Source of the DNA: Auanema rhodensis | Lineage: Eukaryota > Animalia > Nematoda | Length of the DNA: 64,000 nt | Assembly (NCBI GenBank): GCA_964057225.1 | Contig: OZ059899.1 | Location: forward strand, 9,424,001-9,488,000 | Reading direction: 5' to 3' | In this document: positions 2,728 to 64,000 of the stretch, in pieces | Numbering within the stretch: position 1 is the first letter of the stretch | Layout of the letters: each line of letters begins with the position of its first letter | Notes under the pieces: generated by a model | The model's database searches: none | What the model saw: the letters and a program-made list of their open reading frames with translations, nothing else | Told to the model about the DNA's origin: nothing | Made by a program: the position numbers and the translations under genes

Positions 2728-2733
2728 CTTTTT

Positions 2734-3126: not shown

Positions 3127-3463
3127 CTTTAAAACAAACAATAAGAAATAAAATGAAAAAGATTGTTAGATATCCAATTTAAACTTATACATTTACTTCG
3201 ATAAAGAGCCTATTAGATTGAAATTTTATGTCTTACAGTTCTCCAACAGAACAGACTGATCCTGATTTCTCTATGATTACATAAAACTCCCGTTTGATAT
3301 AAAAAAAGGAGAGGAATAACGTTTCCAGGATGTCAAGGATATCGAATCTAGTGATATTGTAGAGAAATGTAATGTGAGCTCCATAGGTTTTCTCCTAATT
3401 TCTCTCATCACAATTGTCTTAGTTTTTTTTCTCATAAGAGTTTCTGAAATCTTAGGTGAACAA

Positions 3464-3873
3464 GGCCGTATATAATTTCCTGGAATTCGAAAGCATTTGG
3501 GATGGAATTTAGAAAGAAAAGAACTAGTTTTTCCTACTTTAAAACAAACAATAAGAAATAAAATGAAAAAGATTGTTAGATATCCAATTTAAACTTATAC
3601 ATTTACTTCAATAAAGAGCCTATTAGTTTGAAATTTTATGTCTTACAGTTCTCCAACAGAACAGACTGATCCTGATTTCTCTATGATTACATAAAACTCC
3701 CGTTTGATATGAAAAAAGAAGAGAAATAACGCTTCTAGGATATCAATGATATTGAATCTAGTGATATTGTAGAGAAATGTAATGTCAGCTCCATAGGTTT
3801 TCTCTTAATTTCTCTCATCACAATTCTCTTAGTTTTTTTTCTCATAAGAGTTTCTGAAATCTTTGTTGAACAA
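3464..3873 (+). pseudogene. Representative tRNA-deleted short unit (retains only tRNA nt 1-5, GGCCG)
   Basis: AACAA-GGCCG is joined directly to TATATAATTTCCTGG, which lies 200 bp further on in long units. Confidence 0.85.
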
Positions 3874-3946
3874 GGTCGCGTGGCGCAATGGATAACGCGT
3901 CTGCCTACGGAGCAGAAGATTATAGGTTCGAATCCTGCCGTGGTCG
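3874..3946 (+). tRNA. tRNA-Arg-ACG: tRNA-Arg(ACG), variant allele C3T+G49A
   Basis: 73-nt cloverleaf with T3-G70 wobble and A49-C65 mismatch. Confidence 0.85.
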
Positions 3947-4891
3947 TAAATTTTTTTCATTTCACTTGTCATTTACAAAAATCGAATTTATCTTCTTCAA
4001 CGATTATTTTTGCAATGTGTCATAAGAATTTCACAGTTGAACAAAACGTTTTTTAAGAAGTTTTTTTGTTGTCAACATATATATTTTGCTGGAATTCAAA
4101 AGCATTTGGGATGGAAATTAGAAAGAAAAGAACTAGTTTTTCCTACTTTAAAACAAACAATAAGAAATAAAATGAAAAAGATTGTTAGATATCCAATTTA
4201 AACTTATACATTTACTTCGATAAAGAGCCTATTAGATTGAAATTTTATGTCTTACAGTTCTCCAACAGAACAGACTGATCCTGATTTTTCTACGATTACA
4301 TAAAACTCTCGTTTAATATAAAAAAAGGAGAGGAACAAGGTTTCCAGGATGTCAAGGATATCGAATCTAGTGATATTGTAGAAAAATGTAATGTCAGCTC
4401 CATAGGTTTTCTCCTAATTTCTCTCATCACAATTGTCTTAGTTTTTTTCTCATAAGAGTTTCTGAAATCTTAGGTGAACAAGGCCGTATAAAATTTCCTG
4501 TAATTCGAAAGCATTTGGGATGGAATTTAGAAAGAAAAGAACTAGTTTTTCCTACTTTAAAACAAACAATAAAAAATAAAATGAAAAAGATTGTTAGATA
4601 TCCAATTTAAACTTATACATTTACTTCGATAAGAAGCCTATTAGTTTGAAATTTTATGTCTTACAGTTCTCCAACAGAACAGACTGATCCTGATTTTTCT
4701 ACGATTACATAAAACTCTCGTTTGATATAAAAAAAGGAGAGGAATAACGTTTCCAGGATGTCAAGGATATCGAATCTAGTGATATTGTAGAAAAATGTAA
4801 TGTCAGCTCCATAGGTTTTCTCCTAATTTCTCTCATCACAATTGTCTTAGTTTTTTTTCTCATAAGAGTTTCTGAAATCTTAGTTGAACAA

Positions 4892-4964
4892 GGCCGCGTG
4901 GCGCAATGGATAACGCGTCTGCCTACGGAGCAGAAGATTGTAGGTTCGAATCCTGCCGTGGTCG
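4892..4964 (+). tRNA. tRNA-Arg-ACG: tRNA-Arg(ACG), consensus allele
   Basis: Acceptor GGCCGCG/CGTGGTC, D-stem GCG/CGC, anticodon stem TCTGC/GCAGA with loop CT-ACG-GA, T-arm GTAGG-TTCGAAT-CCTGC, discriminator G. A box TGGCGCAATGG and B box GGTTCGAATCC. No intron and no encoded CCA. Confidence 0.97.
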
Positions 4965-4968
4965 TAAA

Positions 4969-4975
4969 TTTTTTT
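4969..4975 (+). terminator. RNA polymerase III terminator (T7); an equivalent T7-T8 run follows every tRNA copy
   Basis: TAAA followed by TTTTTTT directly after the discriminator base. Confidence 0.85.
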
Positions 4976-5910
4976 CATTTCACTTGTCATTCATAAAAAT
5001 CGAATTTATTTTTTTCAATGATTTTTTTTTGCAATGTGTCATAAGAATTACACAGTTGAACAAAACGTTTTTTAAGAAGTTTTTTTGTTGTCAACATATA
5101 TATTTTGCTGGAATTCAAAAGCATTTGGGATGGAAATTAGAAAGAAAAGAACTAGTTTTTCCTACTTTAAAACAAACAATAAAAAATAAAATGAAAAAGA
5201 TTGTTAGATATCCAATTTAAACTTATACATTTACTTCGATAAAAAGCCTATTAGTTTGAAATTTTATGTCTTACAGTTCTCCAACAGAACAGACTGATCC
5301 TGATTTCTCTATGATTACATAAAACTCTCGTTTGATATAAAAAAAGGAGAGGAATAACGTTTCCAGGATGTCAAGGATATCGAATCTAGTGATATTGTAG
5401 AGAAATGTAATGTCAGCTTCATAGCTTTTCTCTTGATTTTTCTCATCACAATTGTCTTAGTTTTTTTCTCATAAGAGTTTCTGAAATCTTAGGTGAACAA
5501 GGCCGTATATAATTTCCTGGAATTCGAAAGCATTTGGGATGGAATTTAGAAAGAAAAGAACTAGTTTTTCCTACTTTAAAACAAACAATAAGAAATAAAA
5601 TGAAAAAGATTGTTAGATATCCAATTTAAACTTATACATTTACTTCAATAAAGAGCCTATTAGTTTGAAATTTTATGTCTTACAGTTCTCCAACAGAACA
5701 GACTGATCCTGATTTCTCTATGATTACATAAAACTCCCGTTTGATATGAAAAAAGAAGAGAAATAACGCTTCTAGGATATCAATGATATTGAATCTAGTG
5801 ATATTGTAGAGAAATGTAATGTCAGCTCCATAGGTTTTCTCTTAATTTCTCTCATCACAATTCTCTTAGTTTTTTTTCTCATAAGAGTTTCTGAAATCTT
5901 TGTTGAACAA

Positions 5911-30154: not shown

Positions 30155-30227
30155 GGTCGCGTGGCGCAATGGATAACGCGTCTGCCTACGGAGCAGAAGA
30201 TTATAGGTTCGAATCCTGCCGTGGTCG
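30155..30227 (+). tRNA. tRNA-Arg-ACG: tRNA-Arg(ACG), variant C3T+G49A
   Basis: As 3874. Confidence 0.85.
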
Positions 30228-31172
30228 TAAATTTTTTTCATTTCACTTGTCATTTACAAAAATCGAATTTATCTTCTTCAACGATTATTTTTGCAATGTG
30301 TCATAAGAATTTCACAGTTGAACAAAACGTTTTTTAAGAAGTTTTTTTGTTGTCAACATATATATTTTGCTGGAATTCAAAAGCATTTGGGATGGAAATT
30401 AGAAAGAAAAGAACTAGTTTTTCCTACTTTAAAACAAACAATAAGAAATAAAATGAAAAAGATTGTTAGATATCCAATTTAAACTTATACATTTACTTCG
30501 ATAAAGAGCCTATTAGATTGAAATTTTATGTCTTACAGTTCTCCAACAGAACAGACTGATCCTGATTTTTCTACGATTACATAAAACTCTCGTTTGATAT
30601 AAAAAAAGGAGAGGAACAACGTTTCCAGGATGTCAAGGATATCGAATCTAGTGATATTGTAGAAAAATGTAATGTCAGCTCCATAGGTTTTCTCCTAATT
30701 TCTCTCATCACAATTGTCTTAGTTTTTTTCTCATAAGAGTTTCTGAAATCTTAGGTGAACAAGGCCGTATAAAATTTCCTGTAATTCGAAAGCATTTGGG
30801 ATGGAATTTAGAAAGAAAAGAACTAGTTTTTCCTACTTTAAAACAAACAATAAAAAATAAAATGAAAAAGATTGTTAGATATCCAATTTAAACTTATACA
30901 TTTACTTCGATAAGAAGCCTATTAGTTTGAAATTTTATGTCTTACAGTTCTCCAACAGAACAGACTGATCCTGATTTTTCTACGATTACATAAAACTCTC
31001 GTTTGATATAAAAAAAGGAGAGGAATAACGTTTCCAGGATGTCAAGGATATCGAATCTAGTGATATTGTAGAAAAATGTAATGTCAGCTCCATAGGTTTT
31101 CTCCTAATTTCTCTCATCACAATTGTCTTAGTTTTTTTTCTCATAAGAGTTTCTGAAATCTTAGTTGAACAA

Positions 31173-31245
31173 GGCCGCGTGGCGCAATGGATAACGCGTC
31201 TGCCTACGGAGCAGAAGATTGTAGGTTCGAATCCTGCCGTGGTCG
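31173..31245 (+). tRNA. tRNA-Arg-ACG: tRNA-Arg(ACG)
   Basis: Consensus copy. Confidence 0.96.
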
Positions 31246-46030: not shown

Positions 46031-46103
46031 GGCCGCGTGGCGCAATGCATAACGCGTCTGCCTACGGAGCAGAAGATTGTAGGTTCGAATCCTGCCGTGG
46101 TCG
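46031..46103 (+). tRNA. tRNA-Arg-ACG: tRNA-Arg(ACG), variant G19C (possibly non-functional)
   Basis: D-loop AATGCATAA; the invariant GG is broken. Confidence 0.78.
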
Positions 46104-47869
46104 TAAATTTTTTTCATTTCACTTGTCATTCATAAAAATCGAATTTATTTTTTTCAATGATTTTTTTTTGCAATGTGTCATAAGAATTACACAGTTGAAC
46201 AAAACGTTTTTTAAGAATTTTCTTTGTTGTCAACATATATATTTTCCTGGAATTCGAAAGCATTTGGGATGGAAATTAGAAAGAAAAGAACTAGTTTTTC
46301 CTAATTTAAAACAAACAATAAGAAATAAAATTAAAAAGATTGTTAGATATCCAATTTAAACTTATACATTTACTTCGATAAAGAGCCTATTAGTTTGAAA
46401 TTTTATGTCTTACAGTTCTCCAACAGAACAATCTGATCCTGATTTCTCTATGATTACATAAAACTCCCGTTTGATATAAAAAAAGGAGAGGAATAACGTT
46501 TCCAGGAAGTCAAGGATATCGAATCTAGTGATATTGTAGAGAAATGTAATGTCAGCTTCATAGCTTTTCTCTTGATTTCTCTCATCACAATTGTCTTAGT
46601 TTTTTTCTCATAAGAGTTTCTGAAATCTTAGGTGAACAAGGCCGTATATAATTTCCTGTAATTCGAAAGCATTTGGGATGGAATTTAGAAAGAAAAGAAC
46701 TAGTTTTTCCTACTTTAAAACAAACAATAAGAAATAAACTGAAAAAGATTGTTAGATATCCAATTTAAACTTATACATTTACTTCGATAAAGAGCCTATT
46801 AGATTGAAATTTTATGTCTTACAGTTCTCCAACAAAACAGACTGATCCTGATTTTTCTACGATTACATAAAACTCTCGTTTGATATAAAAAAAGGAGAGG
46901 AACAACGTTTCCAGGATGTCAAGGATATCGAATCTAGTGATATTGTAGAAAAATGTAATGTCAGCTCCATAGGTTTTCCCCTAATTTCTCTCATCACAAT
47001 TGTCTTAGTTTTTTTCTCATAAGAGTTTCTGAAATCTTAGGTGAACAAGGCCGTATAAAATTTCCTGTAATTCGAAAGCATTTGGGATGGAATTTAGAAA
47101 GAAAAGAACTAGTTTTTCCTACTTTAAAACAAACAATAAGAAATAAAATGAAAAAGATTGTTAGATATCCAATTTAAACTTATACATTTACTTCGATAAA
47201 GAGCCTATTAGATTGAAATTTTATGTCTTATAGTTCTCCAACAGAACAGACTGATCCTGATTTTTCTACGATTACATAAAACTCTCGTTTGATATAAAAA
47301 AAGGAGAGGAACAACGTTTCCAGGATGTCAAGGATATCGAATCTAGTGATATTGTAGAAAAATGTAATGTCAGCTCCATAGGTTTTCTCCTAATTTCTCT
47401 CATCACAATTGTCTTAGTTTTTTTTTCTTATAAGAGTTTCAGAAATCTTAGTTGAACAAGGCCGTATAAAATTTCCTGTAATTCGAAAGCATTTGGGATG
47501 GAATTTAGAAAGAAAAGAACTAGTTTTTCCTACTTTAAAACAAACAATAAGAAATAAAATGAAAAAGATTGTTAGATATCCAATTTAAACTTATACATTT
47601 ACTTCGATAAAAAGCCTATTAGTTTGAAATTTTATGTCTTACAGTTCTCCAACAGAACAGACTGATCCTGATTTTTCTACGATTACATAAAACTCTCGTT
47701 TGATATAAAAAAAAGAGAGGAATAACGTTTCCAGGATGTCAAGGATATCGAATCTAGTGATATTGTAGAAAAATGTAATGTCAGCTCCATAGGTTTTCTC
47801 CTAATTTCTCTCATCACAATTGTCTTAGTTTTTTTTCTCATAAGAGTTTCTGAAATTTTAGTTGAACAA

Positions 47870-47942
47870 GGCCGCGTGGCGCAATGCATAACGCGTCTGC
47901 CTACGGAGCAGAAGATTGTAGGTTCGAATCCTGCCGTGGTCG
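47870..47942 (+). tRNA. tRNA-Arg-ACG: tRNA-Arg(ACG), variant G19C
   Basis: As 46031. Confidence 0.78.
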
Positions 47943-49708
47943 TAAATTTTTTTCATTTCACTTGTCATTCATAAAAATCGAATTTATTTTTTTCAATGAT
48001 TTTTTTTTGCAATGTGTCATAAGAATTACACAGTTGAACAAAACGTTTTTTAAGAATTTTCTTTGTTGTCAACATATATATTTTCCTGGAATTCGAAAGC
48101 ATTTGGGATGGAAATTAGAAAGAAAAGAACTAGTTTTTCCTAATTTAAAACAAACAATAAGAAATAAAATTAAAAAGATTGTTAGATATCCAATTTAAAC
48201 TTATACATTTACTTCGATAAAGAGCCTATTAGTTTGAAATTTTATGTCTTACAGTTCTCCAACAGAACAATCTGATCCTGATTTCTCTATGATTACATAA
48301 AACTCCCGTTTGATATAAAAAAAGGAGAGGAATAACGTTTCCAGGATGTCAAGGATATCGAATCTAGTGATATTGTAGAGAAATGTAATGTCAGCTTCAT
48401 AGCTTTTCTCTTGATTTCTCTCATCACAATTGTCTTAGTTTTTTTCTCATAAGAGTTTCTGAAATCTTAGGTGAACAAGGCCGTATATAATTTCCTGTAA
48501 TTCGAAAGCATTTGGGATGGAATTTAGAAAGAAAAGAACTAGTTTTTCCTACTTTAAAACAAACAATAAGAAATAAAATGAAAAAGATTGTTAGATATCC
48601 AATTTAAACTTATACATTTACTTCGATAAAGAGCCTATTAGATTGAAATTTTATGTCTTACAGTTCTCCAACAAAACAGACTGATCCTGATTTTTCTACG
48701 ATTACATAAAACTCTCGTTTGATATAAAAAAAGGAGAGGAACAACGTTTCCAGGATGTCAAGGATATCGAATCTAGTGATATTGTAGAAAAATGTAATGT
48801 CAGCTCCATAGGTTTTCCCCTAATTTCTCTCATCACAATTGTCTTAGTTTTTTTCTCATAAGAGTTTCTGAAATCTTAGGTGAACAAGGCCGTATAAAAT
48901 TTCCTGTAATTCGAAAGCATTTGGGATGGAATTTAGAAAGAAAAGAACTAGTTTTTCCTACTTTAAAACAAACAATAAGAAATAAAATGAAAAAGATTGT
49001 TAGATATCCAATTTAAACTTATACATTTACTTCGATAAAGAGCCTATTAGATTGAAATTTTATGTCTTACAGTTCTCCAACAGAACAGACTGATCCTGAT
49101 TTTTCTACGATTACATAAAACTCTCGTTTGATATAAAAAAAGGAGAGGAACAACGTTTCCAGGATGTCAAGGATATCGAATCTAGTGATATTGTAGAAAA
49201 ATGTAATGTCAGCTCCATAGGTTTTCTCCTAATTTCTCTCATCACAATTGTCTTAGTTTTTTTTTCTTATAAGAGTTTCAGAAATCTTAGTTGAACAAGG
49301 CCGTATAAAATTTCCTGTAATTCGAAAGCATTTGGGATGGAATTTAGAAAGAAAAGAACTAGTTTTTCCTACTTTAAAACAAACAATAAGAAATAAAATG
49401 AAAAAGATTGTTAGATATCCAATTTAAACTTATACATTTACTTCGATAAAAAGCCTATTAGTTTGAAATTTTATGTCTTACAGTTCTCCAACAGAACAGA
49501 CTGATCCTGATTTTTCTACGATTACATAAAACTCTCGTTTGATATAAAAAAAAGAGAGGAATAACGTTTCCAGGATGTCAAGGATATCGAATCTAGTGAT
49601 ATTGTAGAAAAATGTAATGTCAGCTCCATAGGTTTTCTCCTAATTTCTCTCATCACAATTGTCTTAGTTTTTTTTCTCATAAGAGTTTCTGAAATTTTAG
49701 TTGAACAA

Positions 49709-49781
49709 GGCCGCGTGGCGCAATGGATAACGCGTCTGCCTACGGAGCAGAAGATTGTAGGTTCGAATCCTGCCGTGGTCG
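49709..49781 (+). tRNA. tRNA-Arg-ACG: tRNA-Arg(ACG)
   Basis: Consensus copy. Confidence 0.96.
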
Positions 49782-50728
49782 TAAATTTTTTTCATTTCAC
49801 TTGTCATTCATAAAAATCGAATTTATTTTTTTCAATGATTTTTTTTTGCAATGTGTCATAAGAATTACACAGTTGAACAAAACGTTTTTTAAGAATTTTC
49901 TTTGTTGTCAACATATATATTTTCCTGAAATTCGAAAGCATTTGGGATGGAAATTAGAAAGAAAAGAACTAGTTTTTCCTAATTTAAAACAAACAATAAG
50001 AAATAAAATGAAAAAGATTGTTAGATATCCAATTTAAACTTATACATTTACTTCGATAAAGAGCCTATTAGATTAAAATTTTATGTCTTACAGTTCTCCA
50101 ACAGAACAGACTGATCCTGATAATTCTACGATTACATAAAACTCTCGTTTGATATAAAAAAAGGAGAGGAACAACGTTTCCAGGATGTCAAGGATATCGA
50201 ATCTAGTGATATTGTAGAAAAATGTAATGTCAGCTCCATAGGTTTTCTCCTAATTTCTCTCATCACAATTGTCTTAGTTTTTTTCTCATAAAAGTTTCTG
50301 AAATCTTAGGTGAACAAGGCCGTATAAAATTTCCTGTAATTCGAAAGCATTTGGGATGGAATTTAGAAAGAAAAGAACTAGTTTTTCCTACTTTAAAACA
50401 AACAATAAGAAATAAAATGAAAAAGATTGTTAGATATCCAATTTAAACTTACACATTTACTTCGATAAAAAGCCTATTAGTTTGAAATTTTATGTCTTAC
50501 AGTTCTCCAACAGAACAGACTGATCCTGATTTTTCTACGATTACATCAAACTCTCGTTTGATATAAAAAAAGGAGAGGAATAACGTTTCCAGGATGTCAA
50601 GGATATCGAATCTAGTGATATTGTAGAAAAATGTAATGTCAGCTCCATAGGTTTTCTCCTAATTTCTCTCATCACAATTGTCTTAGTTTTTTTTTCTCAT
50701 AAGAGTTTCTGAAATCTTAGTTGAACAA

Positions 50729-50801
50729 GGCCGCGTGGCGCAATGCATAACGCGTCTGCCTACGGAGCAGAAGATTGTAGGTTCGAATCCTGCCGTGGTC
50801 G
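50729..50801 (+). tRNA. tRNA-Arg-ACG: tRNA-Arg(ACG), variant G19C
   Basis: As 46031. Confidence 0.78.
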
Positions 50802-51337
50802 TAAATTTTTTTCATTTCACTTGTCATTCATAAAAATCGAATTTATTTTTTTCAATGATTTTTTTTTGCAATGTGTCATAAGAATTACACAGTTGAACAA
50901 AACGTTTTTTAAGAATTTTCTTTGTTGTCAACATATATATTTTCCTGGAATTCGAAAGCATTTGGGATGGAAATTAGAAAGAAAAGAACTAGTTTTTCCT
51001 AATTTAAAACAAACAATAAGAAATAAAATGAAAAAGATTGTTAGATATCCAATTTAAACTTATACATTTACTTCGATAAAGAGCCTATTAGTTTGAAATT
51101 TTATGTCTTACAGTTCTCCAACAGAACAATCTGATCCTGATTTCTCTATGATTACATAAAACTCCCGTTTGATATAAAAAAAGGAGAGGAATAACGTTTC
51201 CAGGATGTCAAGGATATCGAATCTAGTGATATTGTAGAGAAATGTAATGTCAGCTTCATAGCTTTTCTCTTGATTTCTCTCATCACAATTGTCTTAGTTT
51301 TTTTCTCATAAGAGTTTCTGAAATCTCAGTTTAACAA

Positions 51338-51410
51338 GGCCGCGTGGCGCAATGGATAACGCGTCTGCCTACGGAGCAGAAGATTGTAGGTTCGAATCCT
51401 GCCGTGGTCG
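51338..51410 (+). tRNA. tRNA-Arg-ACG: tRNA-Arg(ACG)
   Basis: Consensus copy. Confidence 0.96.
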
Positions 51411-52357
51411 TAAATTTTTTTTATTTCACTTGTCATTCATAAAAATCGAATTTATTTTTTTCAACGACTATTTTTGCAATGTGTCATAAGAATTTCACAG
51501 TTTAACAAAACGTTTTTTAAGAAGTTTTTTTGTTGTCAACATATATATTTTGCTGGAATTCAAAAGCATTTGGGATGGAAATTAGAAAGAAAAGAACTAG
51601 TTTTTCCTACTTTAAAACAAACAATAAGAAATAAAATGAAAAAGATTGTTAGATATCCAATTTAAACTTTTACATTTACTTCGATAAACAGCCTATTAGA
51701 TTGAAATTTTATGTCTTACAGTTCTCCAACAGAACAGACTGATCCTGATTTTTCTACGATTACATAAAACTCTCGTTTGATATAAAAAAAGGAGAGGAAC
51801 AACGTTTCCAGGATGTCAAGGATATCGAATCTAGTGATATTGTAGAAAAATGTAATGTCAGCTCCATAGGTTTTCTCCTAATTTCTCTCATCACAATTGT
51901 CTTAGTTTTTTTTTCTTATAAGAGTTTCAGAAATCTTAGTTGAACAAGGCCGTATAAAATTTCCTGTAATTCGAAAGCATTTGGGATGGAATTTAGAAAG
52001 AAAAGAACTAGTTTTTCCTACTTTAAAACAAACAATAAGAAATAAAATGAAAAAGATTGTTAGATATCCAATTTAAACTTATACATTTACTTCGATAAAA
52101 AGCCTATTAGTTTGAAATTTTATGTCTTACAGTTCTCCAACAGAACAGACTGATCCTGATTTTTCTACGATTACATAAAACTCTCGTTTGATATAAAAAA
52201 AGGAGAGGAATAACGTTTCCAGGATGTCAAGGATATCGAATCTAGTGATATTGTAGAAAAATGTAATGTCAGCTCCATAGGTTTTCTCCTAATTTCTCTC
52301 ATCACAATTGTCTTAGTTTTTTTTCTCATAAGAGTTTCTGAAATTTTAGTTGAACAA

Positions 52358-52430
52358 GGCCGCGTGGCGCAATGGATAAAGCGTCTGCCTACGGAGCAGA
52401 AGATTGTAGGTTCGAATCCTGCCGTGGTCG
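52358..52430 (+). tRNA. tRNA-Arg-ACG: tRNA-Arg(ACG), variant C23A
   Basis: GGATAAAGCG; breaks the D-stem pair G12-C23. Confidence 0.8.
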
Positions 52431-53377
52431 TAAATTTTTTTCATTTCACTTGTCATTCATAAAAATCGAATTTATTTTTTTCAATGATTTTTTTTTGCAA
52501 TGTGTCATAAGAATTACACAGTTGAACAAAACGTTTTTTAAGAATTTTCTTTGTTGTCAACATATATATTTTCCTGAAATTCGAAAGCATTTGGGATGGA
52601 AATTAGAAAGAAAAGAACTAGTTTTTCCTAATTTAAAACAAACAATAAGAAATAAAATGAAAAAGATTGTTAGATATCCAATTTAAACTTATACATTTAC
52701 TTCGATAAAGAGCCTATTAGATTAAAATTTTATGTCTTACAGTTCTCCAACAGAACAGACTGATCCTGATTTTTCTACGATTACATAAAACTCTCGTTTG
52801 ATATAAAAAAAGGAGAGGAACAACGTTTCCAGGATGTCAAGGATATCGAATCTAGTGATATTGTAGAAAAATGTAATGTCAGCTCCATAGGTTTTCTCCT
52901 AATTTCTCTCATCACAATTGTCTTAGTTTTTTTCTCATAAGAGTTTCTGAAATCTTAGGTGAACAAGGCCGCATAGAATTTCCTGTAATTCGAAAGCATT
53001 TGGGATGGAATTTAGAAAGAAAAGAACTAGTTTTTCCTACTTTAAAACAAACAATAAGAAATAAAATGAAAAAGATTGTTAGATATCCAATTTAAACTTA
53101 CACATTTACTTCGATAAAAAGCCTATTAGTTTGAAATTTTATGTCTTACAGTTCTCCAACAGAACAGACTGATCCTGATTTTTCTACGATTACATAAAAC
53201 TCTCGTTTGATATAAAAAAAGGAGCGGAATAACGTTTCCAGGATGTCAAGGATATCGAATCTAGTGATATTGTAGAAAAATGTAATGTCAGCTCCATAGG
53301 TTTTCTCCTAATTTCTCTCATCACAATTGTCTTAGTTTTTTTTTCTCATAAGAGTTTCTGAAATCTTAGTTGAACAA

Positions 53378-53450
53378 GGCCGCGTGGCGCAATGCATAAC
53401 GCGTCTGCCTACGGAGCAGAAGATTGTAGGTTCGAATCCTGCCGTGGTCG
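53378..53450 (+). tRNA. tRNA-Arg-ACG: tRNA-Arg(ACG), variant G19C
   Basis: As 46031. Confidence 0.78.
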
Positions 53451-55215
53451 TAAATTTTTTTCATTTCACTTGTCATTCATAAAAATCGAATTTATTTTTT
53501 TCAATGATTTTTTTTTGCAATGTGTCATAAGAATTACACAGTTGAACAAAACGTTTTTTAAGAATTTTCTTTGTTGTCAACATATATATTTTCCTGGAAT
53601 TCGAAAGCATTTGGGATGGAAATTAGAAAGAAAAGAACTAGTTTTTCCTAATTTAAAACAAACAATAAGAAATAAAATGAAAAAGATTGTTAGATATCCA
53701 ATTTAAACTTATACATTTACTTCGATAAAGAGCCTATTAGATTGAAATTTTATGTCTTACAGTTCTCCAACAGAACAGACTGATCCTGATTTTTCTACGA
53801 TTACATAAAACTCTCGTTTGATATAAAAAAAGGAGAGGAACAACGTTTCCAGGATGTCAAGGATATCGAATCTAGTGATATTGTAGAAAAATGTAATGTC
53901 AGCTCCATAGGTTTTCCCCTAATTTCTCTCATCACAATTGTCTTAGTTTTTTTCTCATAAGAGTTTCTGAAATCTTAGGTGAACAAGGCCGTATAAAATT
54001 TCCTGTAATTCGAAAGCATTTGGAATGGAATTTAGAAAGAAAAGAACTAGTTTTTCCTACTTTAAAACAAACAATAAGAAATAAAATGAAAAAGATTGTT
54101 AGATATCCAATTTAAACTTATACATTTACTTCGATGAAGAGCCTGTTAGTTTGAAATTTTATGTCTTACAGTTCTCCAACAGAACACACTGATCCTGATT
54201 TTTCTACGATTACATAAAACTCTCGTTTGATATAAAAAAAGGAGAGGAATAACGTTTCCAGGATGTCAAGGATATCGAATCTAGTCATATTGTAGAAAAA
54301 TGTAATGTCAGCTCCATAGGTTTTCCCCTAATTTCTCTCATCACAATTGTCTTAGTTTTTTTCTCATAAGAGTTTCTGAAATCTTAGGTGAACAAGGCCG
54401 TATAAAATTTCCTGTAATTCGAAAGCATTTGGGATGGAATTTAGAAAGAAAAGAACTAGTTTTTCCTACTTTAAAACAAACAATAAGAAATAAAATGAAA
54501 AAGATTGTTAGATATCCAATTTAAACTTATACATTTACTTCGATAAAGAGCCTATTAGATTGAAATTTTATGTCTTACAGTTCTCCAACAGAACAGACTG
54601 ATCCTGATTTTTCTACGATTACATAAAACTCTCGTTTGATATAAAAAAAGGAGAGGAACAAGGTTTCCAGGATGTCAAGGATATCGAATCTAGTGATATT
54701 GTAGAAAAATGTAATGTCAGCTCCATAGGTTTTCTCCTAATTTCTCTCATCACAATTGTCTTAGTTTTTTTCTCATAAGAGTTTCTGAAATCTTAGGTGA
54801 ACAAGGCCGTATAAAATTTCCTGTAATTCGAAAGCACTTGGGATGGAATTTAGAAAGAAAAGAACTAGTTTTTCCTACTTTAAAACAAACAATAAGAAAT
54901 AAAATGAAAAAGATTGTTAGATATCCAATTTAAACTTATACATTTACTTCGATGAAGAGCCTGTTAGTTTGAAAATTTATGTCTTACAGTTCTCCAACAG
55001 AACACACTGATCCTGATTTTTCTACGATTACATAAAACTCTCGTTTGATATAAAAAAAGGAGAGGAATAACGTTTCCAGGATGTCAAGGATATCGAATCT
55101 AGTGATATTGTAGAAAAATGTAATGTCAGCTCCATAGGTTTTCTCCTAATTTCTCTCATCACAATTGTCTTAGTTTTTTTTTCTCATAAGAGTTTCTGAA
55201 ATCTTAGTTGAACAA

Positions 55216-55288
55216 GGCCGCGTGGCGCAATGGATAACGCGTCTGCCTACGGAGCAGAAGATTGTAGGTTCGAATCCTGCCGTGGTCG
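55216..55288 (+). tRNA. tRNA-Arg-ACG: tRNA-Arg(ACG)
   Basis: Consensus copy. Confidence 0.96.
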
Positions 55289-57053
55289 TAAATTTTTTTC
55301 ATTTCACTTGTCATTCATAAAAATCGAATTTATTTTTTTCAATGATTTTTTTTTGCAATGTGTCATAAGAATTACACAGTTGAACAAAACGTTTTTTAAG
55401 AATTTTCTTTGTTGTCAACATATATATTTTCCTGGAATTCGAAAGCATTTGGGATGGAAATTAGAAAGAAAAGAACTAGTTTTTCCTACTTTAAAACAAA
55501 CAATAAGAAATAAAATGAAAAAGATTGTTAGATATCCAATTTAAACTTATACATTTACTTCGATAAAGAGCCTATTAGATTGAAATTTTATGTCTTACAG
55601 TTCTCCAACAGAACAGACTGATTCTGATTTCTCTATGATTACATAAAACTCCCGTTTGATATAAAAAAAGGAGAGGAATAACGTTTCCAGGATGTCAAGG
55701 ATATCGAATCTAGTGATATTGTAGAGAAATGTAATGTCAGCTCCATAGGTTTTCTCTTAATTTCTCTCTTCACAATTGTCTTAGTTTTTTTCTCATAAGA
55801 GTTTCTGAAATCTTAGGTGAAGAAGGCCGTATATATTTTCCTGGAATTCGAAAGCATTTGGGATGGAAATTAGAAAGAAAAGAACTAGTTTTTCCTACTT
55901 TAAAACAAACAATAAGAAATAAAATGAAAAAAATTGTTAGATATCCAATTTAAACTTATACATTTACTTCGATAATGAGCCTATTAGATTGAAATTTTAT
56001 GTCTTACAGTTCTCCAACAGAACAGACTGATCCTGATTTTTCTACGATTACATAAAACTCTCGTTTGATATAAAAAAAGGAGAGGAACAACGTTTCCAGG
56101 ATGTCAAGGATATCGAATCTAGTGATATTGTAGAAAAATGTAATGTCAGCTCCATAGGTTTTCCCCTAATTTCTCTCATCACAATTGTCTTAGTTTTTTT
56201 CTCATAAGAGTTTCTGAAATCTTAGGTGAACAAGGCCGTATAAAATTTCCTGTAATTCGAAAGCATTTGGGATGGAATTTAGAAAGAAAAGAACTAGTTT
56301 TTCCTACTTTAAAACAAACAATAAGAAATAAAATGAAAAAGATTGTTAGATATCCAATTTAAACTTATACATTTATTTCGATGAAGAGCCTGTTAGTTTG
56401 AAATTTTATGTCTTACAGTTCTCCAACAGAACACACTGATCCTGATTTTTCTACGATTACATAAAACTCTCGTTTGATATAAAAAAAGGAGAGGAACAAG
56501 GTTTCCAGGATGTCAAGGATATCGAATCTAGTGATATTGTAGAAAAATGTAATGTCAGCTCCATAGGTTTTCTCCTAATTTCTCTCATCACAATTGTCTT
56601 AGTTTTTTTCTCATAAGAGTTTCTGAAATCTTAGGTGAACAAGGCCGTATAAAATTTCCTGTAATTCGAAAGCATTTGGGATGGAATTTAGAAAGAAAAG
56701 AACTAGTTTTTCCTACTTTAAAACAAACAATAAGAAATAAAATGAAAAAGATTGTTAGATATCCAATTTAAACTTATACATTTACTTCGATGAAGAGCCT
56801 GTTAGTTTGAAAATTTATGTCTTACAGTTCTCCAACAGAACACACTGATCCTGATTTTTCTACGATTACATAAAACTCTCGTTTGATATAAAAAAAGGAG
56901 AGGAATAACGTTTCCAGGATGTCAAGGATATCGAATCTAGTGATATTGTAGAAAAATGTAATGTCAGCTCCATAGGTTTTCTCCTAATTTCTCTCATCAC
57001 AATTGTCTTAGTTTTTTTTTCTCATAAGAGTTTCTGAAATCTTAGTTGAACAA

Positions 57054-57126
57054 GGCCGCGTGGCGCAATGGATAACGCGTCTGCCTACGGAGCAGAAGAT
57101 TGTAGGTTCGAATCCTGCCGTGGTCG
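57054..57126 (+). tRNA. tRNA-Arg-ACG: tRNA-Arg(ACG)
   Basis: Consensus copy. Confidence 0.96.
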
Positions 57127-59300
57127 TAAATTTTTTTCATTTCACTTGTCATTCATAAAAATCGAATTTATTTTTTTCAATGATTTTTTTTTGCAATGTG
57201 TCATAAGAATTACACAGTTGAACAAAACGTTTTTTAAGAATTTTCTTTGTTGTCAACATATATATTTTCCTGGAATTCGAAAGCATTTGGGATGGAAATT
57301 AGAAAGAAAAGAACTAGTTTTTCCTACTTTAAAACAAACAATAAGAAATAAAATGAAAAAGATTGTTAGATATCCAATTTAAACTTATACATTTACTTCG
57401 ATAAAGAGCCTATTAGATTGAAATTTTATGTCTTACAGTTCTCCAACAGAACAGACTGATTCTGATTTCTCTATGATTACATAAAACTCCCGTTTGATAT
57501 AAAAAAAGGAGAGGAATAACGTTTCCAGGATGTCAAGGATATCGAATCTAGTGATATTGTAGAGAAATGTAATGTCAGCTCCATAGGTTTTCTCTTAATT
57601 TCTCTCTTCACAATTGTCTTAGTTTTTTTCTCATAAGAGTTTCTGAAATCTTAGGTGAAGAAGGCCGTATATATTTTCCTGGAATTCGAAAGCATTTGGG
57701 ATGGAAATTAGAAAGAAAAGAACTAGTTTTTCCTACTTTAAAACAAACAATAAGAAATAAAATGAAAAAAATTGTTAGATATCCAATTTAAACTTATACA
57801 TTTACTTCGATAATGAGCCTATTAGATTGAAATTTTATGTCTTACAGTTCTCCAACAGAACAGACTGATCCTGATTTTTCTACGATTACATAAAACTCTC
57901 GTTTGATATAAAAAAAGGAGAGGAACAACGTTTCCAGGATGTCAAGGATATCGAATCTAGTGATATTGTAGAAAAATGTAATGTCAGCTCCATAGGTTTT
58001 CCCCTAATTTCTCTCATCACAATTGTCTTAGTTTTTTTCTCATAAGAGTTTCTGAAATCTTAGGTGAACAAGGCCGTATAAAATTTCCTGTAATTCGAAA
58101 GCATTTGGAATGGAATTTAGAAAGAAAAGAACTAGTTTTTCCTACTTTAAAACAAACAATAAGAAATAAAATGAAAAAGATTGTTAGATATCCAATTTAA
58201 ACTTATACATTTACTTCGATGAAGAGCCTGTTAGTTTGAAATTTTATGTCTTACAGTTCTCCAACAGAACACACTGATCCTGATTTTTCTACGATTACAT
58301 AAAACTCTCGTTTGATATAAAAAAAGGAGAGGAATAACGTTTCCAGGATGTCAAGGATATCGAATCTAGTCATATTGTAGAAAAATGTAATGTCAGCTCC
58401 ATAGGTTTTCCCCTAATTTCTCTCATCACAATTGTCTTAGTTTTTTTCTCATAAGAGTTTCTGAAATCTTAGGTGAACAAGGCCGTATAAAATTTCCTGT
58501 AATTCGAAAGCATTTGGGATGGAATTTAGAAAGAAAAGAACTAGTTTTTCCTACTTTAAAACAAACAATAAGAAATAAAATGAAAAAGATTGTTAGATAT
58601 CCAATTTAAACTTATACATTTACTTCGATAAAGAGCCTATTAGATTGAAATTTTATGTCTTACAGTTCTCCAACAGAACAGACTGATCCTGATTTTTCTA
58701 CGATTACATAAAACTCTCGTTTGATATAAAAAAAGGAGAGGAACAAGGTTTCCAGGATGTCAAGGATATCGAATCTAGTGATATTGTAGAAAAATGTAAT
58801 GTCAGCTCCATAGGTTTTCTCCTAATTTCTCTCATCACAATTGTCTTAGTTTTTTTCTCATAAGAGTTTCTGAAATCTTAGGTGAACAAGGCCGTATAAA
58901 ATTTCCTGTAATTCGAAAGCACTTGGGATGGAATTTAGAAAGAAAAGAACTAGTTTTTCCTACTTTAAAACAAACAATAAGAAATAAAATGAAAAAGATT
59001 GTTAGATATCCAATTTAAACTTATACATTTACTTCGATGAAGAGCCTGTTAGTTTGAAAATTTATGTCTTACAGTTCTCCAACAGAACACACTGATCCTG
59101 ATTTTTCTACGATTACATAAAACTCTCGTTTGATATAAAAAAAGGAGAGGAATAACGTTTCCAGGATGTCAAGGATATCGAATCTAGTGATATTGTAGAA
59201 AAATGTAATGTCAGCTCCATAGGTTTTCTCCTAATTTCTCTCATCACAATTGTCTTAGTTTTTTTTTCTCATAAGAGTTTCTGAAATCTTAGTTGAACAA

Positions 59301-59373
59301 GGCCGCGTGGCGCAATGGATAACGCGTCTGCCTACGGAGCAGAAGATTGTAGGTTCGAATCCTGCCGTGGTCG
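59301..59373 (+). tRNA. tRNA-Arg-ACG: tRNA-Arg(ACG)
   Basis: Consensus copy. Confidence 0.96.
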
Positions 59374-61138
59374 TAAATTTTTTTCATTTCACTTGTCATT
59401 CATAAAAATCGAATTTATTTTTTTCAATGATTTTTTTTTGCAATGTGTCATAAGAATTACACAGTTGAACAAAACGTTTTTTAAGAATTTTCTTTGTTGT
59501 CAACATATATATTTTCCTGGAATTCGAAAGCATTTGGGATGGAAATTAGAAAGAAAAGAACTAGTTTTTCCTACTTTAAAACAAACAATAAGAAATAAAA
59601 TGAAAAAGATTGTTAGATATCCAATTTAAACTTATACATTTACTTCGATAAAGAGCCTATTAGATTGAAATTTTATGTCTTACAGTTCTCCAACAGAACA
59701 GACTGATTCTGATTTCTCTATGATTACATAAAACTCCCGTTTGATATAAAAAAAGGAGAGGAATAACGTTTCCAGGATGTCAAGGATATCGAATCTAGTG
59801 ATATTGTAGAGAAATGTAATGTCAGCTCCATAGGTTTTCTCTTAATTTCTCTCTTCACAATTGTCTTAGTTTTTTTCTCATAAGAGTTTCTGAAATCTTA
59901 GGTGAAGAAGGCCGTATATATTTTCCTGGAATTCGAAAGCATTTGGGATGGAAATTAGAAAGAAAAGAACTAGTTTTTCCTACTTTAAAACAAACAATAA
60001 GAAATAAAATGAAAAAAATTGTTAGATATCCAATTTAAACTTATACATTTACTTCGATAATGAGCCTATTAGATTGAAATTTTATGTCTTACAGTTCTCC
60101 AACAGAACAGACTGATCCTGATTTTTCTACGATTACATAAAACTCTCGTTTGATATAAAAAAAGGAGAGGAACAACGTTTCCAGGATGTCAAGGATATCG
60201 AATCTAGTGATATTGTAGAAAAATGTAATGTCAGCTCCATAGGTTTTCCCCTAATTTCTCTCATCACAATTGTCTTAGTTTTTTTCTCATAAGAGTTTCT
60301 GAAATCTTAGGTGAACAAGGCCGTATAAAATTTCCTGTAATTCGAAAGCATTTGGGATGGAATTTAGAAAGAAAAGAACTAGTTTTTCCTACTTTAAAAC
60401 AAACAATAAGAAATAAAATGAAAAAGATTGTTAGATATCCAATTTAAACTTATACATTTATTTCGATGAAGAGCCTGTTAGTTTGAAATTTTATGTCTTA
60501 CAGTTCTCCAACAGAACACACTGATCCTGATTTTTCTACGATTACATAAAACTCTCGTTTGATATAAAAAAAGGAGAGGAACAAGGTTTCCAGGATGTCA
60601 AGGATATCGAATCTAGTGATATTGTAGAAAAATGTAATGTCAGCTCCATAGGTTTTCTCCTAATTTCTCTCATCACAATTGTCTTAGTTTTTTTCTCATA
60701 AGAGTTTCTGAAATCTTAGGTGAACAAGGCCGTATAAAATTTCCTGTAATTCGAAAGCATTTGGGATGGAATTTAGAAAGAAAAGAACTAGTTTTTCCTA
60801 CTTTAAAACAAACAATAAGAAATAAAATGAAAAAGATTGTTAGATATCCAATTTAAACTTATACATTTACTTCGATGAAGAGCCTGTTAGTTTGAAAATT
60901 TATGTCTTACAGTTCTCCAACAGAACACACTGATCCTGATTTTTCTACGATTACATAAAACTCTCGTTTGATATAAAAAAAGGAGAGGAATAACGTTTCC
61001 AGGATGTCAAGGATATCGAATCTAGTGATATTGTAGAAAAATGTAATGTCAGCTCCATAGGTTTTCTCCTAATTTCTCTCATCACAATTGTCTTAGTTTT
61101 TTTTTCTCATAAGAGTTTCTGAAATCTTAGTTGAACAA

Positions 61139-61211
61139 GGCCGCGTGGCGCAATGGATAACGCGTCTGCCTACGGAGCAGAAGATTGTAGGTTCGAATCC
61201 TGCCGTGGTCG
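61139..61211 (+). tRNA. tRNA-Arg-ACG: tRNA-Arg(ACG)
   Basis: Consensus copy. Confidence 0.96.
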
Positions 61212-62566
61212 TAAATTTTTTTCATTTCACTTGTCATTCATAAAAATCGAATTTATTTTTTTCAATGATTTTTTTTTGCAATGTGTCATAAGAATTACAC
61301 AGTTGAACAAAACGTTTTTTAAGAATTTTCTTTGTTGTCAACATATATATTTTCCTGGAATTCGAAAGCATTTGGGATGGAAATTAGAAAGAAAAGAACT
61401 AGTTTTTCCTACTTTAAAACAAACAATAAGAAATAAAATGAAAAAGATTGTTAGATATCCAATTTAAACTTATACATTTACTTCGATAAAGAGCCTATTA
61501 GATTGAAATTTTATGTCTTACAGTTCTCCAACAGAACAGACTGATTCTGATTTCTCTATGATTACATAAAACTCCCGTTTGATATAAAAAAAGGAGAGGA
61601 ATAACGTTTCCAGGATGTCAAGGATATCGAATCTAGTGATATTGTAGAGAAATGTAATGTCAGCTCCATAGGTTTTCTCTTAATTTCTCTCTTCACAATT
61701 GTCTTAGTTTTTTTCTCATAAGAGTTTCTGAAATCTTAGGTGAAGAAGGCCGTATATATTTTCCTGGAATTCGTAAGCATTTGGGATGGAAATTAGAAAG
61801 AAAAGAACTAGTTTTTCCTACTTTAAAACAAACAATAAGAAATAAAATGAAAAAAATTGTTAGATATCCAATTTAAACTTATACATTTACTTCGATAAAG
61901 AGCCTATTAGATTGAAATTTTATGTCTTACAGTTCTCCAACAGAACAGACTGATCCTGATTTTTCTACGATTACATAAAACTCTCGTTTGATATAAAAAA
62001 AGGAGAGGAACAACGTTTCCAGGATGTCAAGGATATCGAATCTAGTGATATTGTAGAAAAATGTAATGTCAGCTCCATAGGTTTTCCCCTAATTTCTCTC
62101 ATCACAATTGTCTTAGTTTTTTTCTCATAAGAGTTTCTGAAATCTTAGGTGAACAAGGCCGTATAAAATTTCCTGTAATTCGAAAGCATTTGGGATGGAA
62201 TTTAGAAAGAAAAGAACTAGTTTTTCCTACTTTAAAACAAACAATAAGAAATAAAATGAAAAAGATTGTTAGATATCCAATTTAAACTTATACATTTATT
62301 TCGATGAAGAGCCTGTTAGTTTGAAATTTTATGTCTTACAGTTCTCCAACAGAACAGACTGATCCTGATTTTTCTACGATTACATAAAACTCTCGTTTGA
62401 TATAAAAAAAGGAGAGGAACAACGTTTCCAGGATGTCAAGGATATCGAATCTAGTGATATTGTAGAGAAATGTAATGTCAGCTCCATAGGTTTTCTCTTA
62501 ATTTCTCTCATCACAATTGTCTTAGTTTTTTTTCTCATAAGAGTTTCTGAAATCTTTGTTGAACAA

Positions 62567-62639
62567 GGTCGCGTGGCGCAATGGATAACGCGTCTGCCTA
62601 CGGAGCAGAAGATTGTAGGTTCGAATCCTGCCGTGGTCG
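62567..62639 (+). tRNA. tRNA-Arg-ACG: tRNA-Arg(ACG), variant C3T only (recombinant)
   Basis: GGTCGCG 5' end with consensus GATTGTAGG. Confidence 0.9.
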
Positions 62640-63177
62640 TAAATTTTTTTCATTTCACTTGTCATTCATAAAAATCGAATTTATTTTTTTCAATGATTTT
62701 TTTTTGCAATGTGTCATAAGAATTACACAGTTGAACAAAACGTTTTTTAAGAATTTTCTTTGTTGTCAACATATATATTTTCCTGGAATTCGAAAGCATT
62801 TGGGATGGAAATTAGAAAGAAAAGAACTAGTTTTTCCTACTTCAAAACAAACAATAAGAAATAAAATGAAAAAGATTGTTAGATATCCAATTTAAACTTA
62901 TACATTTACTTCGATAAAGAGCCTATTAGATTGAAATTTTATGTCTTACAGTTCTCCAACAGAACAGACTGATCCTGATTTCCCTATGATTACATAAAAC
63001 TCCCGTTTGATATAAAAAAAGGAGAGGAATAACGTTTCCAGGATGTCAAGGATATCGAATCTAGTGATATTGTAGAGAAATGTAATGTCAGCTCCATAGG
63101 TTTTCTCTTAATTTCTCTCATTACAATTGTCTTAGTTTTTTTTTCTCATAAGAGTTTCTGAAATCTTAGTTGAACAA

Positions 63178-63250
63178 GGCCGCGTGGCGCAATGCATAAC
63201 GCGTCTGCCTACGGAGCAGAAGATTGTAGGTTCGAATCCTGCCGTGGTCG
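63178..63250 (+). tRNA. tRNA-Arg-ACG: tRNA-Arg(ACG), variant G19C
   Basis: As 46031. Confidence 0.78.
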
Positions 63251-64000
63251 TAAATTTTTTTCATTTCACTTGTCATTCATAAAAATCGAAATTATTTTTT
63301 TCAATGATTTTTTTTTGCAATGTGTCATAAGAATTACACAGTTGAACAAAACGTTTTTTAAGAATTTTCTTTGTTGTCAACATATATATTTTCCTGAAAT
63401 TCGAAAGCATTTGGGATGGAAATTAGAAAGAAAAGAACTAGTTTTTCCTAATTTAAAACAAACAATAAGAAATAAAATGAAAAAGATTGTTAGATATCCA
63501 ATTTAAACTTATACATTTACTTCGATAAAGAGCCTATTAGATTGAAATTTTATGTCTTACAGTTTTCCAACAGAACAGACTGATCCTGATTTCTCTATGA
63601 TTACATAAAACTCCCGTTTGATATAAAAAAAGGAGAGGAATAACGTTTCCAGGATGTCAAGGATATCGAATCTAGTGATATTGTAGAAAAATGTAATGTC
63701 AGCTCCATAGGTTTTCTCCTAATTTCTCTCATCACAATTGTCTTAGTTTTTTTCTCATAAGAGTTTCTGAAATCTTAGGTGAACAAGGCCGTATAAAATT
63801 TCCTGTAATTCGAAAGCATTTGGGATGGAATTTAGAAAGAAAAGAACTAGTTTTTCCTACTTTAAAACAAACAATAAGAAATAAAATGAAAAAGATTGTT
63901 AGATATCCAATTTAAACTTATACATTTACTTCGATGAAGAGCCTGTTAGTTTGAAATTTTATGTCTTACAGTTCTCCAACAGAACAGACTGATCCTGATT

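What the first reader, a model, noticed from the sequence alone, without database searches (positions are those of the whole stretch)
3127..64000. >60 kb single-isoacceptor tRNA-Arg(ACG) tandem array behaving like satellite DNA
Seen: 62 co-oriented tRNA-Arg(ACG) genes (about 38 identical to consensus), each with A/B boxes and a T-run terminator, in near-identical spacers. The array is open at the right edge and probably continues left of the transposon. Known: tRNA genes are usually dispersed; large tandem arrays are described in Entamoeba and at a few plant and vertebrate loci. A34 is edited to inosine to read CGU/CGC/CGA. Inference: either extreme dosage amplification of one decoder, or a structural role (TFIIIC/condensin platform, boundary, or centromere/subtelomere-like domain). 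This is the best candidate for an undescribed system in the window.
Basis: partly seen in the sequence, partly recalled or inferred. Interest (0 to 1): 0.8.

Follow-up and report, generated by a model that had tools for sequence, protein, structure and literature searches.

The report
tRNA-Arg gene array turned satellite
A roundworm chromosome carries a very long head-to-tail repeat in which one arginine tRNA gene is an optional part of the unit; it is real and striking, but it behaves like ordinary satellite DNA, is one of many such arrays in this genome, and was reported in outline in a 2026 preprint.

Summary
There are 62 co-oriented tRNA-Arg(ACG) genes, and 38 are identical to the consensus. 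Each has an exact B box and a T7 or T8 terminator.

The array is a two-module satellite:
- 62 T modules of 198-199 bp, holding tRNA nt 6-73 plus the trailer.
- 118 tRNA-less B modules of 409-412 bp.

All 55 B-to-B junctions share one breakpoint inside the tRNA 5' end, so the tRNA-less unit comes from a single 199-bp deletion. Modules group by their position in the unit, not by adjacency. Multi-unit blocks of 2,847 bp are 99.8-99.96% identical, which marks higher-order repeats made by unequal exchange.

The tRNA is not significantly better conserved than its spacers, and 26% of copies carry damaging variants.

The genome is a rhabditine nematode. Earlier scan notes name it Auanema rhodense. The scan already met this same satellite on other DNA, from 184 kb left to about 1 Mb right of this window, between candidate DNA-elimination break sites. 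A 2026 preprint reports 19,554 tRNA genes and tRNA arrays in germline-restricted repeat blocks.

My reading is a neutrally amplified satellite, probably germline-restricted, and not a dosage or TFIIIC system. Expression and elimination were not testable here.

The parts
16..2139 (+). 3' part of the pol ORF of a Ty3/gypsy LTR retrotransposon (RNase H, integrase zinc finger, integrase core). It runs off the left edge of the window.
   Evidence: The ORF is listed. Pfam gives RT_RNaseH_2 2e-32, rve 6.5e-15 and Integrase_H2C2 3e-14. The best relatives are Caenorhabditis pol proteins at 40-44% identity over 98-99% of the query, and Auanema sp. JU1783 at 57% over 43%.
2746..3126 (+). 3' LTR of the retrotransposon, preceded by a polypurine tract (AAGGTGGGGGGA). 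It is inserted at position 69/70 of a B module.
   Evidence: Contigs of three runs end their match exactly at 2746 and at 3126 and continue into different sequences (table 7). The sequence is shown.
3127..64000 (+). Tandem array of 62 T modules and 118 B modules, plus one B module truncated by the LTR. It is open at the right edge.
4892..4964 (+). Representative consensus tRNA-Arg(ACG) gene. A box TGGCGCAATGG, B box GGTTCGAATCC, and a T7 terminator at 4969-4975.
4897..5095 (+). Representative T module (199 bp): tRNA nt 6-73 plus a 131-nt trailer. This is the segment missing from tRNA-less units.
   Evidence: Module decomposition and junction sequences.
4077..4485 (+). Representative B module (409 bp). 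It ends in the tRNA leader plus tRNA nt 1-5 (GGCCG). It has no A or B box, no Rfam match and no Pfam match in its ORFs.
30155..35848 (+). Two adjacent copies of a 2,847-bp higher-order repeat (four tRNA units with spacings 1018+611+609+609), 99.96% identical. A third copy at 38496-41342 is 99.8% identical.
46031..62566 (+). tRNA-poor right part of the array. Seven of its eleven units carry 3 to 5 B modules per tRNA (spacings 1428-2247 bp); the other four carry one or two.

Best explanation
This is satellite DNA that grew out of a tandem tRNA-Arg(ACG) gene array.

The ancestral unit was about 609 bp: the tRNA gene, a 131-nt trailer and about 405 nt of leader. One 199-bp deletion removed tRNA nt 6-73 and the trailer, producing a 409-bp tRNA-less monomer. 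Unequal exchange then amplified multi-unit blocks that mix both monomer types, giving higher-order repeats.

By sequence, most T modules are complete Pol III type-2 genes. However, the array's growth does not depend on the tRNA, and individual copies are under little or no selection.

I infer, and have not shown, that the array is one of the chromosome-specific central repeat blocks of a nematode with programmed DNA elimination, probably Auanema rhodense. If so, it exists only in the germline and early embryo, where selection against repeat growth is weak. Somatic cells would then rely on dispersed tRNA-Arg(ACG) genes.
For: Shown in the window:
- There are 62 T and 118 B modules.
- All 55 B-to-B junctions share the breakpoint AAGGCCG|TATA, with tRNA nt 1-5 kept. 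The opposite history, insertion of a tRNA lacking its first 5 nt into an older satellite, would need the satellite to supply a pairing 5-mer by chance. My estimate of that chance is about 1.6%.
- B modules group by position in the unit. Nearest neighbours share the same context in 109 of 115 cases. Same-context distance is 1.9-2.3%, while adjacent modules differ by 3.4%, the same as the overall mean.
- 2,847-bp blocks are 99.8-99.96% identical and 1,839-bp units 99.8% identical. Nineteen T-module haplotypes recur in fixed orders.
- Nucleotide diversity (pi) is 0.013 in the tRNA, 0.033 in the leader and 0.044 in the trailer. The segregating-site test gives p=0.11, and 12% of 73-nt flank windows are at least as conserved as the tRNA.
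- 16 of 62 copies carry G49A (10), G18C (5) or C23A (1), each breaking a stem or the conserved D-loop GG. They occur as amplified subfamilies.
- No B box lies outside the tRNAs.
- Independent DNA runs from two other studies hold the array words at k-mer depths of 10^3-10^4.
- The same tRNA occurs with other flanks elsewhere in those runs (loose ends at 4887, 4972, 7620, 7622).

Context:
- The pol protein is rhabditine-nematode-like.
- Scan notes place the same satellite from -184 kb to +1.05 Mb of this window.
- Scan notes place break sites at -4.68 Mb and a candidate at +2.25 Mb on the same piece.
- The preprint 10.64898/2026.08.27.747507 reports 19,554 tRNA genes, central repeat blocks unique to each autosome with units of 167-504 bp that are eliminated from the soma, and tRNA arrays among them.
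Against: - The tRNA does show about 2.5-fold lower diversity than its flanks, and 61% of copies are perfect. Some purifying selection or biased conversion cannot be excluded.
- Elimination from the soma, the species identity and the megabase extent all rest on unverified scan notes and one preprint whose tables are not readable here.
- No expression data bear on Pol III transcripts.
Confidence: 0.7

Rival explanations
1. Germline or early-embryo dosage reservoir. The array is kept because hundreds of active tRNA-Arg(ACG) genes supply oocytes and cleavage-stage embryos, and it is discarded from the soma when no longer needed. This would parallel Xenopus oocyte-type 5S genes, but with DNA loss in place of silencing.
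For: - 38 of 62 copies are perfect, and all 62 keep an exact B box and a terminator.
- Diversity is lower in the tRNA than in its flanks.
- The preprint reports only 215 pseudogenes among 19,554 tRNA loci.
Against: - The lower diversity is not significant.
- Damaged variants are amplified as freely as intact ones.
- tRNA-less monomers outnumber gene-bearing ones 118:62 here, and 4-5:1 further right according to scan notes.
- Scan notes list equally large arrays for rarely used decoders such as Trp, which does not fit codon demand.
- Clustered tRNA genes with intact promoters are silent in Arabidopsis (PMC7544208).
Confidence: 0.13
2. Structural role. The block acts as a TFIIIC/condensin platform or boundary, or as a chromosome-specific identity or pairing domain in meiosis.
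For: - The preprint speculates that central repeat blocks unique to each autosome could aid homologue recognition.
- By the scan notes, all listed instances of this satellite lie on one assembled piece.
Against: - Two thirds of the modules lack any A or B box, so a TFIIIC-based role would use only a minority of units.
- tRNA density varies more than two-fold within 60 kb.
- Nothing in the sequence singles out a protein-binding motif. Any chromosome-specific satellite would fit a pairing role equally well.
Confidence: 0.1
3. Assembly artefact. A much shorter array was inflated or mis-ordered by the assembler.
For: Long near-identical repeats are hard to assemble. No read spanning the array could be inspected, because only contigs were served.
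Against: - Array words reach k-mer depths of thousands in runs from independent studies.
- The units carry ordered, non-random variant patterns and higher-order repeats.
- The preprint states that HiFi reads map uniquely across such blocks.
Confidence: 0.03

Closest known systems
tRNA, 5S and U2 arrays within germline-restricted tandem-repeat blocks of Auanema rhodense (preprint 10.64898/2026.08.27.747507)
   Same: - A nematode with thousands of tRNA genes (19,554).
- tRNA genes that sit in tandem blocks.
- Repeat units of 167-504 bp; the 409-bp module fits this range.
- ncRNA density below 20% per 10 kb; here it is about 7%.
   Different: As far as its text is readable here, the preprint gives only an outline. 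It does not describe this array's isoacceptor, its two-module build, the single 199-bp deletion or the higher-order repeats. Identity of the species and of the block was not proven here.
Entamoeba tRNA gene arrays (PMC2652664)
   Same: Tandem, co-oriented, highly uniform tRNA-bearing units that make up a large share of the genome. Their function is unclear and a structural role has been discussed.
   Different: Entamoeba units hold up to 5 different tRNA genes with microsatellite-like spacers, and they carry nearly all tRNA genes of the cell. Here there is one isoacceptor, a tRNA-less sister monomer, and dispersed copies elsewhere in the genome.
Clustered tRNA genes of Arabidopsis (PMC7544208)
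   Same: Extra tandem copies with conserved Pol III elements alongside dispersed functional genes. They show that intact-looking arrayed tRNA genes can be transcriptionally silent.
   Different: The plant clusters have tens of copies and are silenced by DNA methylation. Here there are hundreds of copies or more, chromatin is untested, and the array is probably removed from the soma altogether.
Higher-order-repeat satellites such as primate alpha satellite (my own knowledge)
   Same: Monomers differ by a few percent, while multi-monomer blocks are nearly identical. Homogenisation is by unequal exchange.
   Different: Here the monomer derives from, and in a third of cases still contains, a complete Pol III gene.
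Vertebrate tRNA clusters: zebrafish and stickleback (PMC2888827); the Xenopus 3.18-kb tDNA repeat (my own knowledge)
   Same: Thousands of clustered, mostly parallel tRNA genes in some animal genomes.
   Different: Those clusters are mostly heterogeneous, mixing isoacceptors. This array is strictly one isoacceptor.

Membership tests
Tandem tRNA gene array | Many head-to-tail copies of a tRNA gene in one orientation | tested here: met
   62 genes, all on the + strand, with regular spacings.
Tandem tRNA gene array | Genes fold as canonical tRNAs with one anticodon | tested here: met
   ARAGORN calls ACG in all 62. Rfam gives 58.3 and 47.9 bits against a threshold of 29. 16 copies carry stem or D-loop defects.
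Tandem tRNA gene array | Pol III internal promoter and terminator present | tested here: met
   62 of 62 have an exact B box and a T7 or T8 run 4 nt downstream. The A box is intact except in the 5 G18C copies.
Tandem tRNA gene array | Genes are transcribed | not testable with these tools
   Only assembled contigs were served. The RNA-like run covers only the LTR, and short Pol III RNAs would be lost in such libraries.
Satellite DNA with higher-order repeats | Long uninterrupted tandem array of a few-hundred-bp monomer | tested here: met
   60.9 kb within the window, open at the right edge. The extent beyond 1.2 Mb comes only from scan notes.
Satellite DNA with higher-order repeats | Multi-monomer blocks far more alike than neighbouring monomers | tested here: met
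   Blocks are 99.8-99.96% identical, while adjacent monomers differ by 3.4%.
Satellite DNA with higher-order repeats | No sequence constraint beyond homogenisation | tested here: inconclusive
   Diversity in the tRNA is 0.013 against 0.033-0.044 in the flanks. The difference is not significant: p=0.11, and 12% of flank windows are as conserved.
Germline-restricted central repeat block of Auanema rhodense | Genome is A. rhodense | tested here: inconclusive
   The pol protein's best relatives are Caenorhabditis and Auanema sp. JU1783, so this is a rhabditine nematode. The species name comes from scan notes. Run and organism names are coded.
Germline-restricted central repeat block of Auanema rhodense | Lies between two break sites with the 29-nt palindrome | not tested
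   Scan notes place sites at -4.68 Mb and +2.25 Mb on the same piece. The left border of the block was not located, and the sequence outside the window is not readable here.
Germline-restricted central repeat block of Auanema rhodense | Lower read depth than retained DNA (29x against 236x in the preprint) | not testable with these tools

The most novel reading that the evidence does not exclude
Several hundred intact tRNA-Arg(ACG) genes sit in DNA that exists only in the germline and in embryos up to about the 12-cell stage. If they are transcribed there, the worm would adjust tRNA gene dosage between germline and soma by physically discarding gene arrays. That would be a DNA-elimination counterpart of the oocyte-type and somatic-type 5S gene switch. 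Alternatively, the chromosome-specific block could serve homologue recognition in meiosis.
Probability: 0.12. Interest if true: 0.7.

Novelty: new member of a known kind. Interest (0 to 1): 0.4.

Why it matters
The window gives a clean, stepwise record of how a tandem gene array becomes non-coding satellite: one deletion, then higher-order amplification. It also offers ready-made variant tags (U4; U3+A49; C18) that would let tRNA sequencing show whether arrayed tRNA genes in probably germline-only DNA are ever used. If they are silent, the reported 19,554 tRNA genes are mostly satellite ballast, and tRNA gene counts should not be read as decoding capacity. If they are active, it would be a new way of tuning tRNA supply between germline and soma.

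Tried and rejected
- An exact-protein look-up of the 104-aa ORF that starts inside the tRNA, tried to reach a named genome record, found nothing on record.
- The preprint's supplementary tables S3 and S4, which would name the repeat families and the eliminated tRNA arrays, are images and are not held as text.
A word query on depth and elimination of tRNA arrays returned nothing.
- The spacer is not a fossil protein exon by any test available: three spacer ORFs have no significant Pfam match, and an Rfam scan at E<=1 of 12 kb on both strands finds only tRNA.
- I rejected the history in which a tRNA was inserted into an older 409-bp satellite. The tRNA-less unit keeps tRNA nt 1-5 and the same leader.
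- I rejected an array-targeting retrotransposon. The LTR has other flanks elsewhere in three runs.
- Two papers suggested by a search for tRNA-derived satellites did not deal with such satellites. A search for tRNA genes together with programmed DNA elimination gave nothing specific.
- The RNA-like run is uninformative for Pol III products.
- Arg codon counts in the retrotransposon ORF (25 CGN, 17 AGR) say nothing about host demand, so I did not use them.
Full report
**Observation**

ARAGORN finds 62 tRNA-Arg(ACG) genes, all on the + strand, between 3874 and 63250.
- The consensus scores 58.3 bits on the Rfam tRNA model, against a gathering score of 29. The commonest variant scores 47.9.
- The B box GGTTCGAATCC occurs 62 times, only in the tRNAs, where 1.7 matches are expected by chance.
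- Every gene is followed after 4 nt by a T7 (49 copies) or T8 (13 copies) run.
- GC content is a flat 30-31% across the array.

**Anatomy**

The gene-to-gene spacings are 609, 1019, 1429, 1838 and 2247 bp, and Tandem Repeats Finder reports a 409-411-bp period between the genes. Anchoring on conserved words splits the array into two module types:
- 62 T modules of 198-199 bp, each holding tRNA nt 6-73 plus a 131-nt trailer.
- 118 B modules of 409-412 bp, plus one B module truncated by an LTR.

Every T module is followed by one to five B modules. Each B module ends with the tRNA leader and the first five tRNA nucleotides (GGCCG). All 55 B-to-B junctions have the same breakpoint, AAGGCCG|TATA.

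The 409-bp unit is therefore the 609-bp gene unit minus one 199-bp segment, lost once. The reverse history would be the insertion of a tRNA lacking its first 5 nt into an older satellite. That satellite would have to supply, by chance, a 5-mer that pairs with the 3' acceptor strand; I estimate this at about 1.6%.

**Higher-order structure**

B modules resemble other B modules that occupy the same place in the unit:
- Nearest neighbours share the same context in 38 of 39 (after T), 36 of 39 (before T), 20 of 22 (between two T) and 15 of 15 (internal) cases.
- Same-context distance is 1.9-2.3%. Adjacent modules differ by 3.4%, the same as the overall mean.

Nineteen T-module haplotypes recur in fixed orders. 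Self-similarity peaks at lags of 2847, 5494 and 8341 bp.
- Two adjacent 2,847-bp blocks (30155-33001 and 33002-35848) are 99.96% identical. A third copy at 38496 is 99.8% identical.
- 1,839-bp units are 99.8% identical.

This is the classical signature of higher-order repeats spread by unequal exchange. It also shows that the deletion is older than the present amplification. tRNA density falls from 13 per 10 kb in the middle of the window to 6 per 10 kb on the right.

**State of the genes**

Six of the 73 tRNA positions vary.
- C3T and C4T turn C-G pairs into U-G wobbles.
- G49A (10 copies) breaks the 49-65 T-stem pair.
- G18C (5 copies) destroys the conserved D-loop GG and the end of the A box.
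- C23A (1 copy) and G24A (1 copy, which also carries G49A) break D-stem pairs.

So 16 of 62 copies (26%) carry a probably damaging change, and these variants occur as amplified subfamilies within the higher-order repeats.

Nucleotide diversity is 0.013 in the tRNA, 0.033 in the 400-nt leader and 0.044 in the trailer. The count of segregating sites does not differ significantly (Fisher p=0.11). Of the 73-nt windows in the flanks, 12% have at least as many consensus-identical copies as the tRNA, which has 61% against a flank mean of 40%. Selection on single copies is therefore weak or absent at this time scale.

The spacers hold no other Rfam family, and their ORFs match no Pfam family.

**Surroundings and organism**

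The left 3.1 kb is the 3' part of a Ty3/gypsy LTR retrotransposon. Its LTR spans 2746-3126 and interrupts a B module at position 69/70. Contigs from three runs leave the LTR at both ends into different sequences, so the element also sits elsewhere and is not array-specific.

Its pol protein is closest to Caenorhabditis proteins (40-44% identity over the full length) and to a partial Auanema sp. JU1783 protein (57%). The genome is therefore a rhabditine nematode.

Earlier notes of this scan name it Auanema rhodense and report arrays for Phe, Trp, Leu(TAA), Glu(CTC), Ala(AGC), Arg(CCT) and Asp. I could not confirm the species name myself, because run and organism names are coded.

The scan has also met this same 409/609 satellite before on other DNA, in windows from 184 kb left to about 1.05 Mb right of mine. 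One follow-up on those windows reached the same conclusion of a single 199-bp deletion. Notes place a confirmed break site 4.68 Mb to the left, genes (unc-49) 4.12 Mb to the left, and a candidate break site 2.25 Mb to the right.

**Literature**

The preprint 10.64898/2026.08.27.747507 makes these statements about A. rhodense:
- It has 19,554 tRNA loci, of which only 215 are pseudogenes.
- 61% of the germline genome is eliminated from the soma.
- Every autosome has a central eliminated repeat block with its own repeat families, with units of 167-504 bp.
- These blocks include arrays of 5S, U2 and 'several' tRNA loci.
- Retained autosomal regions have under 10% repeats.

The 2019 assembly of the same species had about 500 tRNA loci (PMC6469403). 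If the species and extent leads hold, a megabase satellite on an autosome must lie in eliminated DNA. I put this at about 0.75. The preprint's tables naming the families are images and could not be read.

**Reads**

I laid four runs on 2601-8600, which is 6,000 letters.
- DNA contigs of two further coded organisms or labels, from two studies, cover 27-29 of the 30 bins at k-mer depths of 10^3-10^4. The repeat is therefore truly high-copy.
- The RNA-like run covers only the LTR (2685-3126). This says nothing about Pol III products.
- Contigs that match the tRNA but leave it at 4887, 4972, 7620 and 7622 into other sequences show the same tRNA at other loci, so dispersed copies exist.

**Explanation**

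Best reading (0.7): a tandem tRNA-Arg(ACG) gene array has become a satellite.
- Shown: the modules, the single deletion, the higher-order repeats, the lack of significant constraint, the amplified defective variants, and the absence of Pol III boxes from two thirds of the modules.
- Inferred: amplification by unequal exchange in DNA under weak selection, and germline restriction.

The rivals are a germline or embryo dosage reservoir (0.13), a structural or pairing role (0.10) and an assembly artefact (0.03).

Intact-looking arrayed tRNA genes can be silent, as in Arabidopsis (PMC7544208). Tandem tRNA arrays of unknown function are long known in Entamoeba (PMC2652664), and clustered tRNA genes are known in several animals (PMC2888827).

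**Verdict**

This is a real and handsome example of a known kind of feature. It is one of many in this genome, it was reported in outline in 2026, and this scan has already seen it on neighbouring DNA. What is new is the fine structure and a concrete way to test expression with array-private variants.

Noticed in passing
window 1-3126: A Ty3/gypsy LTR retrotransposon with an open pol frame is inserted in a B module. Its LTR (2746-3126) is present in an RNA-like run and has different flanks elsewhere in three runs. It is therefore multi-copy, possibly transcribed, and not specific to this array.
   Followed up: partly
window 4731 / 7151 (joint seen in runs X5 and X9): Contigs of two runs join B position 246 to B position 19 through 17 other letters (GCATATTGGATAGAAAT), at k-mer depth 540-720. 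This looks like a third, shortened monomer type of the same satellite. It does not occur in this window.
   Followed up: no
window 4887, 4972, 7620, 7622 (loose ends in runs X5 and X9): Contigs that match the tRNA leave it into unrelated flanks, which points to dispersed tRNA-Arg(ACG) genes of the same or nearly the same sequence outside the array.
   Followed up: no
window 7554-7868 and the same place in most units: A 104-codon ORF starts at the ATG inside the tRNA D-arm and runs through the trailer into the B module. It has no Pfam match and no exact record in the protein collection, so it is almost certainly spurious. Gene callers could nevertheless pick it up many times.
   Followed up: yes
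window 5004-5036 and the same place in most units: A 16-bp motif (ATTTATTTTTTGCAATG) is duplicated in tandem in the tRNA trailer. It is a small internal slippage product fixed across the array.
   Followed up: no
run X14 (coded organism D), matches at window 3444-3594 and 8327-8477: A run labelled as a fourth organism holds two 151-nt contigs at depth 2 that match the B module with 0-2 differences. This could be trace carry-over or a close relative.
   Followed up: no
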